From: Zygophlyctis sp. KS116 | Lineage: Eukaryota; Fungi; Chytridiomycota | Length of the DNA stretch: 32,000 bases | Reading direction: 5' to 3' | Assembly (NCBI GenBank): GCA_054661495.1 | Contig: BAAFSQ010000016.1 | Location: 1-32,000, forward strand | Part shown: positions 2,865-17,560 of the stretch, piece after piece | Position numbering within the stretch: the first letter of the stretch is position 1 | Layout: each line of letters opens with the position of its first letter | Notes under the pieces: model-generated | Told to the model about the DNA's origin: nothing | What the model saw: only the letters and a program-made list of their open reading frames with translations | Database searches by the model: none | Made by a program: the position numbers and the translations under genes

Positions 2865-3417
2865 TCATAAAGCAAACATGACGGAAAGGACCAATGATAC
2901 AGCCGAAATTGCTGAAATTGAGTAACCACCACTTTGAGTACTAGCCATCAGTGAACCTTGGTCAGTGTGCTGTTGAAAGCTTGACTTGGGATCATTTGGT
3001 CGCTGAACACCTGCTCCTATTGCCCAGATAAAATCGTTTCCAAGTGGAACTCTGGATTCATCCAATCTTGTAATAGTGCATTTCAGGTTTGAATTCTGCA
3101 CATTTTTAGCAGTTACTGCAGTATCTAAAGGTGCATCTTTAGCAAGTTGATTGGTAGAAAATCCAGGCAGTGATTGTTGTGGAGCTGATCGGGAAGATAC
3201 CACACATTCCCCTTTTTCATTTTTCCAGAATACAAACATTGTGCTGTTTACCATTGTTTTACCAAGGCCGAAAGAAGCCCAGCTATGGAATTAATATTAT
3301 TTTATCATACCCATTCTTATCAGGAACTTTGGCATCAATTGTAATCAAAGTTTTATCAGAAGCAGTAGTCTTGTAGAGACATAAAGTATTACCAGGGTTG
3401 CATAAAATCAAAGACAT
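2865..3417 (-). CDS. Single DOMON (heme b / CDH-cytochrome-like) domain protein with C-terminal hydrophobic or GPI-like tail; 28-nt intron 3283-3310
   Basis: GWASFGLGKTMVNSTMFVFW (candidate Met ligand), FIWAIG and FQQH (candidate His ligand), ending in SGGYSISAISAVSLVLSVMFAL. Confidence 0.75.
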
Positions 3418-3702
3418 TTCAAATATTTTTAGAAAGAATCTATAAATAGTTGTGCGGCATGGCGGACTAAAACGGCTCGCTCCCCCTGAATCAACAATCT
3501 ATTTTAAGAGCATTCAGGAACTTTTAATAGCCGGTTTAAGTGAATTTTAAGAATGATATACAATGTCCGATTCATGTCGCTTTTACAGAAACTCAACAGA
3601 AATTATTATTGAAAGAGCTAAAGGCTTCCAGAGAATGTTTGACCACTGATTAATTATTAGAGAGATTGACTCGGCAATAAACCGCGAGTGTATTTGTAAA
3701 TT

Positions 3703-4107
3703 ATGAGCGATATAACTCCTCTGACTCCCGTTTCTTGCAGGCCTATGGCTAATTATTGTAACACAACTCCTCGAAGAAGATCCGGTAAAAGAAGGACACA
3801 GTCCGACACTTATAGAAAAGTCGCTCTTACACGCTCTGCTTCTCAAGCTCTTAGAATTCAAAAGCCCATAATTGCCTCTAGATCATATTCCTTCAGAAAT
3901 AAACATCTTCTATTGGAACTATTGGCTGATAGTGCATTATCAGATTCAAATAAGAATAATGAAAAGGAAAATTCCATTCAGAAAATAACTCCAGCCTTGG
4001 AAGATTCACAAACTTCAAGTAAATCTTTGGGCAATGCAAAGATTTCTAAAAGAAAAGTAAAAGCTACTTCTATCAAACTTAATCTATTAAAGTCATCAAA
4101 CGCTTAG
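3703..4107 (+). CDS. Uncharacterised basic, probably disordered nuclear protein; 5' structure uncertain
   Basis: 134-aa ORF fills the gap up to 3 nt from the SHY1 stop. It has TP sites (TPLTP, TPRR), basic NLS-like stretches and an LLELLADSAL helix. Confidence 0.55.
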   Translation: MSDITPLTPVSCRPMANYCNTTPRRRSGKRRTQSDTYRKVALTRSASQALRIQKPIIASRSYSFRNKHLLLELLADSALSDSNKNNEKENSIQKITPALEDSQTSSKSLGNAKISKRKVKATSIKLNLLKSSNA

Positions 4108-4110
4108 GAA

Positions 4111-4892
4111 TTATCTTAGTAGCCGTTTCTTCTTTCCTAATAATCCAATAAATGAAAATACACTTAATCCAAACCATGTTATGGCATATCCTAAATGATT
4201 ATTGACTAAATTAATTTCAGGTTCACGAGGAAAAGGAAAGTATTTCTTATAATGCATAGTATTTATCGGAGAATCAGTCACAAGTTCCACCAATGTTTCA
4301 GAAGAGCCACAAATTTCAGACATTTGTTTTGTGTCTGCAAAAAACCATTGATTTATAGAAGGATCATTCTTAATCTTCATTAGTCCTTGTTGAGATTCAC
4401 CCTGTCTTAGAATCCCATCAATCTCTATTTCTTCATCAATCTAAAATCATTAAATATAGATATTACTCTTCTAAATTCTCTATTACTACTCCATGATCTA
4501 GGAATCCATCCTCTATTTACCAGCAAAAGTCTTCCATCTTGCAGTTTAAAAGGAGAAAATACAAAATAGCCAATCTCACTACCAGAAGACATTAGTCCTC
4601 CTCCATGATTTCCTGCAGACGGAGGAGTTCTTGGTCCGACTAGAAATTCAGAGTCTAGAAAAGATCCTTTGCCACAGACTCTAGTAAATTGAAGATCCGG
4701 ATCAGATCTAACATAAGATTCCTTAACTTACGAATCTGGAATTGGAATTGGAGGTTTTTTAGTTCTCTCAGAAGCCTTTTCAATTAAATCTAATTTCCAT
4801 TTTCTCCTTTCAACTTGCCATCTTTTCTATTAATTTACACAATGTTACATTCCCAATCCAAATGTTGTAATAGGAACACTCCATAACCACAT
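4111..4892 (-). CDS. SHY1: SURF1/Shy1 cytochrome c oxidase assembly factor; introns 4822-4848, 4708-4731, 4441-4466
   Basis: Spliced TFGLGIWQVERRKWK, LLVNRGWIP and NNHLGYAITWFGLS are SURF1 hallmarks. Confidence 0.92.
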
Positions 4893-6093
4893 TTACAACT
4901 TCACCCTAACGCCCTGACAGCCAATTTCTGCCTCAAAGACTGAGAATCCAAGAGATTCTAATTCCATTATTAGAGATTCAACTTGTTTTTTTGAGATTGA
5001 GTCTGGTATTAAAGTTAATGCACAACCTCCTCCACCCGCTCCAGTTAATTTTGTACAAAGTCCTCTTGTTTTTGTATAGTTGACAATTTTATCCAAAATC
5101 TCGTGTCCAACTCCTAAAGAATTGAGAAGAGAATGGTTTATTTCCAAAAGAGACTATAAAGTGACTTGATCTAATTCTTACAGATAACTTTTTCTCCATA
5201 ATTTCACCAGATAATTCTTCTCCAAACAATTTTACAATTAAAGAGGAAATTTCATGAATAGCATCCAAGATTGGATTTATAATATCAGGAAACTATAATA
5301 ATTTCAAGTAAACTTTAAATACCTCTTGTACTCTTTTTCGTACAATTGATACTTGCCTTCCTGTATTTTTCTCTATTTTAGAATCAATTAATAGAAATCT
5401 CATGCTATTAAATCCCTTGATATCATTCATTTCACCTTTAGTAAACACTTTTGCACCACCATACACGACAAGCGTATTATCTATTCCTGAAGGATTTCCA
5501 TGAAGAATAGTTTCTCCAACAAAAGCCCAGGCATTAATGAGTTCCAAGTCCCTTATAGACAAATTTAAAGGATCTTTTATATATCCATAAAAGCATAAAA
5601 GAGATGCTGAAAGTACAACACAACTACTAATTTAAAATATTAAAAATTACAATGAAGCCGATGATCCCAATCCTCCTCCAATTGGCAATTTACTATTAAT
5701 ACTTAATATAAGACCGTCAGGTTTATTCCTAATAGACAGCCAGAGATATAAAACTGTAGAAACTGATTTTGATACTAAATCTGTTGAAAATGACCAATTA
5801 TCCTTTATAATTTGCAATTGAGTCTGATCCACCTGAAAGTTATTATTCACAATAAAAAAGTCTTTAAATTCATCCATTTTCCAGCATGTTTTAAAGTTGA
5901 AATTATCCATGATCAAGGTTAGTGAGTCTGACTTAGTAATAGAAGCAGTAGTTTCTAAACCGAGTGAGCATGCGATTGCCGATTTTCCATATACTACCGC
6001 ATGTTCACCGCATAGTATCACTTTTCCTGGGGCCGAGACTTGGAATCCGTCGGTGCCATGGAAACTCGTGAGCGACTGATCTTGCGTCGTCAT
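4893..6093 (-). CDS. ERG12: Mevalonate kinase; introns 5627-5650, 5293-5322, 5154-5181
   Basis: [36 protein letters not shown] and [10 protein letters not shown] (GHMP kinase motifs). Confidence 0.95.
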
Positions 6094-7567
6094 GCGCGCA
6101 GTTTCGCTAATGAAAACGCTGGTGATTGTTGATCAGGAGACAAAAGAGCAGCTAGAATTACCAGTTGAACAAGACACTGTCAAATCGTCTGGATTCGAGA
6201 GCTGGGGGCTATCTATCTACGACAATGGATATCTAAATACTGCTGTTTGTCGCTCTAAAATCTCGTATATTGACGGTGACAGAGGAATTCTTCGATATCG
6301 TGGGTATGATATTGAAGACTTGGCCGAACATTCAAACTTTTTAGAAGTCTCTTATCTGCTTTTGTATGGAGAGTTGCCCTCTCCAGAACAGCAAGATGTC
6401 TGGACTACGAGGGTCTTGAGGCATACATATAGTATTATTTTATTGATATTTTAATTTATTAGTTCATGAAAATATGGTTAATTATCTCAAAAGTTTTAGA
6501 TATGATGCTCATCCAATGGGAATGTTGATTTCTTCTATTTGTGCAATGTCAACGTTTCATCCAGAGGCAAGTACAGCGTTGCAAGGCCCTGATATCTACC
6601 AGGAAGAGTCAATGGTCAATAAGCAGATATTTAGATGTTTGGGTAAAATACCTACTCTTGCTGCTTGTGCTTATAGGCATCGGATTGGTAGACCGTATAA
6701 TACTCCCTCAAATGATTTGGGATATACAGAAAATTTTTTGTATATGTTGGATAGATTGTCAGAGACTAATTATAAGCCTAATCCAAAATTGACAAGAGCT
6801 TTAGATGTTATTTTCATACTTCATGCAGATCGTAAGTTTATGTTTGATTAAAGAAAATAGATGAATTAAATTGTTCAACTGCAGCAATGCGACAATTAGC
6901 ATCAACTGGAGTCGATCCATTTATTTGTTTAACTGGAGCTGCGGGTGCTCTTTATGGTCCTTCGCATGGTGGTGCAAATGAGGCTGCGCTTAAAATGCTT
7001 GAAGAAATTGGTTCTGTTGAAAATATTCCAGAATTCATTCAAGATGTAAAAGCTAAAAAACGAAGATTGATGGGGTTCGGACATCGTATCTACAAGTCTT
7101 ATGATCCAAGAGCAAAGATTTTAAAAAAGATTGCAGGACAAGTATTTGAAATTATGGGAAGAAATCCAATAATTGATGTTGCTGTTGAATTGGAGCGAAT
7201 AGCCTTGAGTGATGGTAATTTTAAACTTTTTAAATTTGGTAGAATATTTTATTAAACGAAACTTGTACCCAAATGTTGATTTTTACTCTGGAATCATTTA
7301 TAAAGCCATGGGATTCCCGGTAATTCCTAAAGAACTTATTTCTAGACCGACTTTTTCCCAGTTTTATTCTGTTTAGCACGAACTGCAGGCTGGCTTGCTC
7401 ATTGGAAAGAGCAGCTTCACGATCCTTCACCAATCTTTCGCCCTTTTCAGCATAGTTTAGTAACAAAAAAGGATTTTGTACCAATTATTGAACGTCCGAA
7501 TTCAAGTGGTCAGTCTGTACAAGATCTTTTAGAAAAGCAAAGTGCTAGAAAATGTTTAAGAAAATGA
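6092..7567 (+). CDS. Citrate synthase, bacterial/glyoxysomal-type; start at 6092 or 6110; introns 6432-6462, 6832-6860, 7215-7242, 7320-7345
   Basis: [57 protein letters not shown] and [10 protein letters not shown] after splicing. Confidence 0.93.
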
Positions 7568-17442: not shown

Positions 17443-17560
17443 TTTCTTAAACCTTTTTTAAAGAGATATAAGAATGGTATAATATTCTCTTTAAATTCAT
17501 CCACGAGATATCCGAACAATCGGAATTTTAGGCTTTTCAAGACGCGCGTAAATTTCTTGA

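What the first reader, a model, noticed from the sequence alone, without database searches (positions are those of the whole stretch)
4880..4905. Zero-gap tandem junction: mevalonate kinase stop abuts SHY1 start (TAA ATG), same strand and frame
Seen: the - strand reads ...GTG AAG TTG TAA ATG TGG TTA TGG...; the ERG12 stop (4895-4893) is followed directly by the only ATG (4892-4890) ahead of the conserved SURF1 TFGLGxWQ helix. There is no room for UTRs or a promoter. Inference: possible explanations are a bicistronic mRNA with termination-reinitiation, readthrough to an in-frame fusion, or a SHY1 promoter inside ERG12 coding sequence. A functional link is plausible, because the mevalonate pathway supplies the farnesyl group of heme a, which Shy1 helps deliver to Cox1.
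Basis: partly seen in the sequence, partly recalled or inferred. Interest (0 to 1): 0.8.

Follow-up and report, generated by a model that had tools for sequence, protein, structure and literature searches.

The report
Touching genes in a compact chytrid
In a very compact lake fungus the mevalonate kinase gene ends exactly where the SURF1/SHY1 gene begins; the junction is real and conserved, but it is the extreme end of genome-wide gene packing, most likely with overlapping messages, and not a fusion protein or a proven operon.

Summary
On the minus strand the mevalonate kinase (MVK/ERG12) stop TAA (4895-4893) is followed directly by the SURF1/SHY1 start ATG (4892-4890), in the same frame. Removing six 24-30 nt introns gives proteins of 372 and 234 residues.

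- **Reproducibility:** the same TAAATG is in three other metagenome assemblies of 97-99% identical populations.
- **Conservation:** six diverged relatives (68-73% DNA identity) keep MVK then SURF1 with a 4 or 5 nt spacer and the same MWLW start codon. The reading frames therefore differ between lineages, which rules out a conserved readthrough fusion.
- **Reinitiation signals:** I found no TURBS motif, no conserved RNA structure and no hidden upstream exon.
- **Genome context:** in 232 kb of this 12.7 Mb genome, tandem stop-to-start gaps run from -8 to 60 nt (median 28). Convergent genes abut or overlap (median 3 nt), and divergent starts lie 33-45 nt apart.

This junction is the tight end of a continuum. 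The most likely mechanism is overlapping transcription units: SURF1 starts inside MVK's last exon on a short leader, and the MVK 3' end forms inside SURF1.

No RNA data could be reached, so a bicistronic mRNA is not excluded. The scan has noted sibling junctions elsewhere in this genome.

The parts
4896..6093 (-). Mevalonate kinase (ERG12/MVK) coding region, 372 codons. Exons 6093-5651, 5626-5323, 5292-5182 and 5153-4896. Introns 5650-5627 (24 nt), 5322-5293 (30 nt) and 5181-5154 (28 nt).
   Evidence: Pfam GHMP_kinases_N and GHMP_kinases_C on the exons. PDB mevalonate kinases match, best 2r3v at E=4e-18. The splice model gives one open frame.
4893..4895 (-). MVK stop codon TAA.
   Evidence: The last exon aligns to human MVK residues 297-379 of 396, so the protein is complete.
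4890..4892 (-). SURF1/SHY1 start codon ATG, zero bases after the MVK stop.
   Evidence: In seven lineages it is the first in-frame ATG after an in-frame stop.
4849..4892 (-). SURF1 exon 1 (44 nt), encoding MWLWSVPITTFGLG plus two bases of the Ile codon.
   Evidence: It is highly conserved in relatives. Exon 1 contains no AG in L009, L018 or L022, so no upstream exon can splice into it.
4822..4848 (-). SURF1 intron 1, 27 nt, GTAAC...AAAAG. It uses an AAG acceptor. A TAG acceptor 5 nt upstream would break the frame.
   Evidence: Only the 27-nt version restores TFGLGIWQ. Relatives have the same intron ending in AAG.
4114..4821 (-). SURF1 exons 2-4 (4821-4732, 4707-4467, 4440-4114) with introns 4731-4708 (24 nt) and 4466-4441 (26 nt). 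The stop TAA is at 4113-4111. The protein has 234 residues.
   Evidence: Pfam SURF1 PF02104 on each exon. Whole-genome scan shows a single copy. Splice model.
3703..4107 (+). Conserved 134-residue gene of unknown family, convergent on SURF1. The two stop codons are 3 nt apart.
   Evidence: ORF listed with no Pfam hit. It is 67-71% identical in L003, L009 and L022 and 97% in L020.
6094..6109 (.). 16-nt divergent spacer between the MVK ATG (6093) and the conserved citrate synthase ATG (6110). It contains the only GCGCGC in the window.
   Evidence: Relatives have a 14-18 nt spacer, or 35 nt in L010.

Best explanation
The junction comes from extreme genome compaction in an uncultured chytrid-like fungus. 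It is not a dedicated coupling device.

MVK and SURF1 are separate genes that make separate proteins, and their transcription units overlap. I infer three steps:
1. SURF1 mRNA starts inside the last exon of MVK and carries a short leader of roughly 40 nt or less.
2. The promoter elements for SURF1 are therefore buried in MVK coding sequence.
3. The MVK mRNA is cleaved and polyadenylated downstream of its stop, inside SURF1 exon 1, intron 1 or exon 2.

The ancestral spacer was 4-5 nt. The window's lineage lost those last bases, which by chance left the two ORFs in one frame.

Shown here: the gene models, the conservation of the start codon, the changing frames between lineages, and the genome-wide tiny spacers at all three kinds of junction.

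Inferred, not shown: where transcripts begin and end.
For: - **Gene models:** exact models with two complete proteins.
- **Reproducibility:** the junction is reproduced in three other assemblies.
- **Conservation:** six diverged lineages keep the same start codon behind a 4-5 nt spacer. The frame relation therefore changes between lineages.
- **Both flanks of the pair are just as tight.** The MVK start lies 16 nt from the divergent citrate synthase start. The SURF1 stop lies 3 nt from a conserved convergent gene. Promoters and 3' ends must therefore lie inside neighbours even where polycistrony is impossible.
- **Genome-wide spacers in 232 kb:** tandem gaps -8 to 60 nt, median 28, n=21. Convergent gaps -23 to 54 nt, median 3, 13 pairs. 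Divergent ATG-ATG distances 33-45 nt. At least 82% of the DNA lies in long coding segments.
- **Short leaders:** upstream ATGs are depleted only in the 40 nt before start codons, 6 seen against about 28 expected.
- **MVK's last exon is ATG-poor** in most lineages, 0-4 per 255 nt against about 5 in the rest of the gene.
- **Precedent:** overlapping transcripts that start in upstream genes or end in downstream genes are documented in compact eukaryotic genomes (PMC3629993, citing PMC1182411).
Against:
- No conserved promoter-like motif is visible in the last 100 nt of MVK, which is the least conserved part of the exon.
- The ATG depletion does not extend into upstream coding sequence more than it does at convergent control ends.
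- The low ATG count in MVK's last exon is weak statistically (per-lineage P 0.03-0.75), and the lineages are not independent.
- Stop-start proximity of 0-5 nt across seven lineages is also what termination-reinitiation would require.
Confidence: 0.6

Rival explanations
1. A true bicistronic mRNA. MVK and SURF1 are transcribed from the MVK promoter as one message. Ribosomes that terminate at the MVK stop reinitiate at the SURF1 AUG 0-5 nt downstream.
For: The stop-to-start distance stays at 0-5 nt in seven lineages. The spacer is free of other AUGs. Polycistronic readthrough transcripts are documented in other fungi (PMC4503453).
Against: From general knowledge, reinitiation after a 372-codon ORF is very inefficient without a dedicated element. 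No UGGGA/TURBS motif lies within 150 nt in any lineage. There is no stable or covarying structure (z=0.31, covariation term -0.01). Equally small spacers occur at divergent and convergent junctions, which this mechanism cannot explain. In the Agaricomycete cases the genes were also transcribed independently, and translation of downstream ORFs was not shown.
Confidence: 0.15
2. A polycistronic precursor is cut into single-gene mRNAs, for example by spliced-leader trans-splicing at an AG just before the ATG, as in nematode SL1-type or tunicate operons.
For: An AG lies 7-12 nt upstream of the ATG in all lineages. Zero-spacer operons of this kind exist in nematodes and tunicates (general knowledge).
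Against: To my knowledge, spliced-leader trans-splicing has not been described in fungi. There is no pyrimidine tract before the AG. The AG sits in the conserved Lys-Leu codons of MVK, so it is explained by coding. Divergent and convergent junctions are just as tight. I did not search for a spliced-leader gene.
Confidence: 0.04
3. Stop-codon readthrough or recoding makes an MVK-SURF1 fusion protein.
For: In the window's lineage the two ORFs are in the same frame with a single TAA between them.
Against: Relatives have 4 or 5 nt spacers, so the ORFs are out of frame there. UAA-A is a strong termination context (general knowledge). A cytosolic kinase fused in front of the first membrane helix of SURF1 has no precedent among the MVK homologues found, which are all 320-430 residues long.
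Confidence: 0.02
4. The SURF1 start is mis-called. A hidden upstream exon, for example one encoding a mitochondrial presequence, splices into exon 1, so the stop and the real start do not abut.
For: The predicted protein begins directly at the first membrane helix with no presequence. From general knowledge, this is unusual for mitochondrial SURF1/Shy1.
Against: In the window's lineage the codon before the ATG is a stop, so no acceptor can precede it in frame. Exon 1 contains no AG at all in L009, L018 and L022. The ATG is conserved as the first in-frame ATG in all seven lineages. Introns in this genome are 23-32 nt almost without exception, so a donor would have to lie in MVK's last exon, and the candidates there break the frame.
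Confidence: 0.03

Closest known systems
[quoted passage not shown]
   Same: The intergenic spacers are too short to hold promoters and 3' signals. In those genomes, transcripts start inside upstream genes or end inside downstream genes (PMC3629993, citing PMC1182411). All three junction orientations are affected.
   Different: This genome is intron-rich, with many 24-30 nt introns. It has a full mitochondrial gene set (SURF1, citrate synthase). Its nearest named relatives by MVK are chytrids, with Batrachochytrium at 41-43%. Transcript overlap is inferred here, not observed.
Polycistronic readthrough transcripts of Agaricomycete fungi (PMC4503453)
   Same: Co-oriented, unrelated fungal genes lie next to each other and could be covered by one transcript.
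   Different: In those fungi, multiple stop codons and real spacers separate the ORFs. The genes are also transcribed independently, and translation of the downstream ORF was left open. Here the spacer is 0-5 nt and no transcript data exist.
Viral termination-reinitiation (calicivirus and influenza B UAAUG-type, TURBS-dependent)
   Same: The stop and start codons abut or lie within a few bases of each other.
   Different: There is no UGGGA motif upstream and no conserved structure. The upstream ORF is a 372-codon cellular gene.
Zero-spacer operons resolved by spliced-leader trans-splicing (nematode SL1-type, tunicates)
   Same: The upstream gene's end and the downstream gene's start coincide.
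   Different: No spliced leader is known in fungi, and no acceptor context is visible. I did not test this further.

Membership tests
Mevalonate kinase (GHMP kinase superfamily) | GHMP N-terminal ATP-binding motif and GHMP C-terminal domain | tested here: met
   PF00288 and PF10509 hit exon 1, and PF08544 hits exon 4, at exon-level scores near the cut-offs.
Mevalonate kinase (GHMP kinase superfamily) | Specific similarity to experimentally solved mevalonate kinases, with a complete C-terminus | tested here: met
   The last exon matches nine PDB mevalonate kinases. The best is human 2r3v at E=4e-18, residues 297-379 of 396. Named full-length homologues are MVKs.
SURF1/Shy1 (PF02104) | SURF1 domain over its full length, including the TFGLGxWQ helix | tested here: met
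   Profile positions 13-205 lie on exons 2-4. Exon 1 plus the splice gives TFGLGIWQ.
SURF1/Shy1 (PF02104) | N-terminal mitochondrial presequence ahead of the first membrane helix, as in yeast Shy1 and human SURF1 (from general knowledge) | tested here: not met
   The protein starts 14 residues before WQ. The preceding codon is the MVK stop, and the same start is used in seven lineages. Full-length chytrid SURF1 proteins were not compared.
Termination-reinitiation (TURBS type) | Stop and restart codons overlapping or within a few bases | tested here: met
   The spacer is 0, 4 or 5 nt in seven lineages.
Termination-reinitiation (TURBS type) | Upstream 18S-complementary motif UGGGA within about 100 nt, held in a structure | tested here: not met
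   There is no TGGGA or GGGA in the 150 nt upstream in any lineage. The fold z-score is 0.31 and the covariation term is -0.01.
Termination-reinitiation (TURBS type) | A bicistronic mRNA exists and the downstream ORF is translated from it | not testable with these tools
Programmed readthrough fusion | The two ORFs are in frame across related lineages | tested here: not met
   They are in frame only in the window's lineage. The 4 and 5 nt spacers elsewhere put them out of frame.
Overlapping transcription units of compacted eukaryotic genomes | Spacers too short for promoter and 3' signals at tandem, divergent and convergent junctions alike | tested here: met
   Median tandem gap 28 nt, median convergent gap 3 nt, divergent distances 33-45 nt in 232 kb. 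At this locus the gaps are 16, 0 and 3 nt.
Overlapping transcription units of compacted eukaryotic genomes | Transcripts observed to begin in the upstream gene or end in the downstream gene | not testable with these tools
   No RNA data were reachable. No spliced full-length MVK of this clade turned up among database proteins.
Spliced-leader operon | A spliced-leader RNA and a trans-splice acceptor before the downstream ATG | not tested
   I only saw that no pyrimidine tract precedes the nearest AG. I made no search for a spliced-leader gene.

The most novel reading that the evidence does not exclude
MVK and SURF1 are expressed from one bicistronic mRNA in this chytrid clade. SURF1 is translated by reinitiation directly after a 372-codon ORF, without a TURBS-like element. 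Selection for this has held the stop-start distance at 0-5 nt across at least seven lineages. That would be a cellular, fungal form of long-ORF termination-reinitiation, and possibly a genome-wide way of expressing tightly packed tandem genes.
Probability: 0.12. Interest if true: 0.8.

Novelty: new member of a known kind. Interest (0 to 1): 0.4.

Why it matters
On its own, the junction is one more instance of touching genes in this genome. The scan has already noted sibling cases elsewhere in it.

Its value is as a clean test case:
- Both gene models are exact.
- The start codon is pinned by seven lineages.
- The spacer varies (0, 4 or 5 nt), so the frame relation changes between lineages.

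Taken together, this genome combines two properties. It is packed about as tightly as a microsporidian genome: median tandem gap 28 nt, and convergent genes abutting or overlapping. It also keeps many 25-28 nt introns and an ordinary mitochondrial metabolism.

That makes it a good place to ask how RNA polymerase II promoters and 3'-end signals work when they must sit inside neighbouring coding sequence. A single long-read RNA data set would settle whether such pairs are overlapping units or operon-like.

Tried and rejected
**RNA evidence**
- I looked for spliced, full-length MVK proteins of this clade as a proxy for transcripts. Only genomic exon ORFs turned up.

**Searches that found little**
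- The one metagenome scan returned a contig that stops 66 nt upstream of the SURF1 last exon, so it says nothing about the junction.
- The PDB holds no SURF1 relative.
- Rfam found nothing in 3000-7500.

**Ideas rejected or left weak**
- An intron that removes the MVK stop and makes a fusion: the candidate donors and acceptors break the frame (read).
- A hidden upstream SURF1 exon: rejected.
- AATAAA in SURF1 intron 1 as the MVK poly(A) signal. It sits at +48 from the ATG in all six diverged relatives. However, it is absent from the window's lineage, and AATAAA is not enriched 10-60 nt after stops at 47 gene ends. I keep this only as a weak idea.
- ATG depletion in the coding 3' ends of upstream genes: no different from convergent controls.

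**Limits and flawed controls**
- The comparison of MVK last-exon ATG counts with distant relatives was flawed. Three of the four control ORFs end at introns, not at the real C-terminus.
- I left the large representative protein search unused.
- The joined (spliced) proteins were never sent to any search tool. Exons were searched one by one by reference. The joined form was built only inside a script, to count codons.

Full report
**What is there**

The window is the first 32 kb of contig 16 of a 12.7 Mb assembly in 1175 contigs. It has 34.5% G+C. On the minus strand the sequence reads ...GTG AAG TTG TAA ATG TGG TTA TGG....

The upstream gene is mevalonate kinase.
- Its exons hit the GHMP kinase N and C Pfam domains.
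- Its last exon aligns to solved mevalonate kinases. The best match is human 2r3v at E=4e-18, residues 297-379 of 396, so the protein is complete at this stop.

The downstream gene is SURF1/SHY1.
- Pfam PF02104 positions 13-205 fall on exons 2-4.
- It is the only SURF1 in the assembly.

Removing six introns of 24-30 nt, all starting GTA and ending AG, gives two consecutive open frames of 372 and 234 codons in the same frame, separated only by TAA. I searched the spliced proteins exon by exon by reference. The joined proteins were never sent to a search tool.

**Is the junction real?**

Three contigs from other metagenome assemblies (L004, L005, L020) are 97-99% identical in DNA to the window. 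They differ by SNPs and small indels, and all carry the same TAAATG. An assembly deletion is therefore excluded.

SURF1 intron 1 must be the 27-nt version that ends in AAG. The TAG acceptor 5 nt earlier breaks the frame. All relatives have an intron at the same place ending in AAG, and it restores TFGLG(I/V)WQ.

**Relatives**

Exon-level protein searches and contig look-ups found six further lineages at 68-73% DNA identity: L006/L007, L008, L009, L010, L018/L019 and L022. All have MVK followed directly by SURF1.

| Lineage | Sequence between stop and start | Spacer |
|---|---|---|
| Window, L004, L005, L020 | TAA ATG | 0 nt |
| L006 | TGA AGAA ATG | 4 nt |
| L022 | TAA GTTC ATG | 4 nt |
| L008, L010, L018 | TAA GATCA ATG | 5 nt |
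| L009 | TAA CATCA ATG | 5 nt |

- In every lineage the MWLW ATG is the first in-frame ATG after an in-frame stop.
- Exon 1 contains no AG at all in L009, L018 and L022. No upstream exon can therefore splice into it.
- The start codon is thus fixed, while the frame relation between the two ORFs takes three different values. That rules out a conserved readthrough or recoding fusion.
- The zero spacer in the window's lineage looks like loss of the last 4-5 bases of an already minimal spacer.

The pair sits in a longer conserved block of unrelated genes, in window order: Obg GTPase, a CDH-cyt domain gene, a 134-residue gene, SURF1, MVK, citrate synthase, a 93-residue gene, PIG-F and a methyltransferase.

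More distant MVK loci (L011-L017) have other neighbours and no SURF1 downstream. I therefore see no evidence for a specific mevalonate-to-heme a link. The adjacency is inherited synteny within one clade.

The nearest named MVK proteins are from Batrachochytrium (41-43%), Spizellomyces and Chytridiales.

**Tests of the special mechanisms**

- A calicivirus-type reinitiation element is absent. There is no UGGGA, or even GGGA, within 150 nt upstream in any lineage.
- The 135 nt around the junction fold no better than shuffled sequence (z=0.31).
- The seven-lineage alignment gives a covariation term of -0.01.
- Rfam finds nothing in 3000-7500.
- The last 100 nt of MVK are the least conserved part of its last exon, so no conserved promoter motif is visible either.

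**Context at the locus and in the genome**

Both outer flanks of this gene pair are as tight as the junction itself.
- The MVK ATG (6093) lies 16 nt from the conserved citrate synthase ATG (6110) on the other strand. Relatives have 14-18 nt, or 35 nt in L010.
- The SURF1 stop lies 3 nt from the stop of a convergent 134-residue gene. That gene is 67-71% identical in three diverged lineages.

I then took 200 kb from five other contigs plus the window and called long coding segments with a codon-usage score.

| Measure | Range | Typical value | n |
|---|---|---|---|
| Tandem stop-to-ATG gap | -8 to 60 nt | median 28 nt | 21 |
| Convergent stop-to-stop gap | -23 to 54 nt | median 3 nt | 13 pairs |
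| Divergent ATG-to-ATG distance | 33-45 nt, one at -2 | about 34 nt | 9 starts |
| Candidate intron length | 19-44 nt | peak 25-28 nt | 93 |

At least 82% of the DNA lies in coding segments of 70 codons or more. These junction calls are heuristic, and a few "tandem" cases may be introns. Even so, the picture is clear: zero is the tight end of a continuum. Three of 21 tandem pairs have gaps of 1 nt or less.

Upstream ATGs are depleted only in the 40 nt before candidate start codons: 6 observed against about 28 expected. Part of this follows from how the starts were chosen, but a one-third correction still leaves it significant. From -41 outward the count is at the expected level. This suggests leaders of about 40 nt or less.

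The depletion does not reach into upstream coding sequence more than at convergent control ends. It therefore cannot separate an internal transcription start from post-termination scanning.

At this locus the nearest upstream ATG lies 63-275 nt before the SURF1 ATG in all seven lineages. MVK's last exon holds 0-4 ATGs per 255 nt, against about 5 in the rest of the gene. This is suggestive only.

**Most likely mechanism**

Divergent and convergent neighbours are packed as tightly as tandem ones, and polycistrony cannot explain those. The economical reading is that in this genome promoters and 3'-end signals routinely sit inside neighbouring genes.

For this pair I infer the following.
- SURF1 transcripts start inside MVK's last exon on a short leader.
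- MVK transcripts end inside SURF1.

This is the pattern documented for microsporidia and nucleomorphs (PMC3629993, citing PMC1182411). I put it at about 0.6.

The rivals:
- A bicistronic mRNA with reinitiation stays possible, at about 0.15. The 0-5 nt spacing is what it would need, and polycistronic transcripts occur in other fungi (PMC4503453). In that study, however, the genes were also transcribed independently and translation of downstream ORFs was left open.
- Fusion, a hidden exon and trans-splicing are each unlikely.

**What I could not do**

**A side idea: AATAAA in SURF1 intron 1**

AATAAA sits at +48 from the SURF1 ATG, inside intron 1, in all six diverged relatives. The motif is absent from the window's lineage, and AATAAA is not enriched after stops at 47 gene ends. 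It stays a weak lead.

**Verdict**

The junction is a new member of a known kind: gene packing with probable overlapping transcription in a compact eukaryotic genome. The scan has already flagged sibling junctions elsewhere in this genome.

The host genome is the more interesting object. It combines near-microsporidian packing with many tiny introns and normal mitochondrial genes.

Noticed in passing
window 4849-4892 (-): SURF1 begins directly at its first membrane helix (MWLWSVPITTFGLG) with no N-terminal extension or presequence, and the same start is used in all seven lineages. How it reaches the mitochondrial inner membrane is open. The basic stretch after the helix (RRKWKLDLIEKASERTKK) might act as an internal signal.
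   Followed up: partly
window 6094-6109: The 16-nt spacer between the divergent MVK and citrate synthase starts holds the only GCGCGC in the 32 kb window. CGCGC-like sequence sits just before the MVK ATG in L009, L018, L020 and L022, but not in L010. Similar ACGCGCG sites lie near 17544 and 21919, the latter a few bases before a minus-strand ATG. This may be a promoter or regulatory element.
   Followed up: partly
window 3703-4113: The SURF1 stop (4113-4111) and the stop of a conserved convergent 134-residue gene with no Pfam family (ending at 4107) are 3 nt apart. Their 3' untranslated regions must overlap each other's coding sequence.
   Followed up: partly
L006, L008, L009, L010, L018, L022: +48 from the SURF1 ATG: SURF1 intron 1 starts GTAAAATAAA in all six diverged relatives, while the rest of the intron varies. 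The window's lineage has GTAACATTGTG instead. This could be the MVK poly(A) signal hidden in the neighbour's intron, but AATAAA is not generally enriched after stops in this genome.
   Followed up: partly
window 4822-4848 (-): SURF1 intron 1 has two possible acceptors 5 nt apart: TAG, giving a 22-nt intron that shifts the frame, and AAG, giving the 27-nt in-frame intron. Use of the upstream one would give a truncated product.
   Followed up: no
window 4896-5153 (-), and the same exon in relatives: The last exon of MVK is poor in ATG triplets. The window has 1 in 255 nt against about 5 per 255 nt in the rest of the gene, and L009 has none. This is compatible with the exon also serving as the SURF1 leader, but it is weak statistically.
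   Followed up: partly
G000 contigs C1-C5 (1-40000 each) and the window: Convergent gene pairs commonly overlap at their 3' ends, with stop-to-stop gaps down to -23 nt and a median of 3 nt. Other tandem pairs have overlapping or touching stop and start codons, for example C1 at about 28550, C3 at about 18450 on the minus strand, and C4 at about 32830 on the minus strand (coordinates are on the strand read).
   Followed up: partly
window 4896-4901 (-), and relatives: MVK ends in -KL in six of seven lineages (VKL or IKL). This faintly resembles a peroxisomal PTS1 tripeptide, but I did not test it.
   Followed up: no
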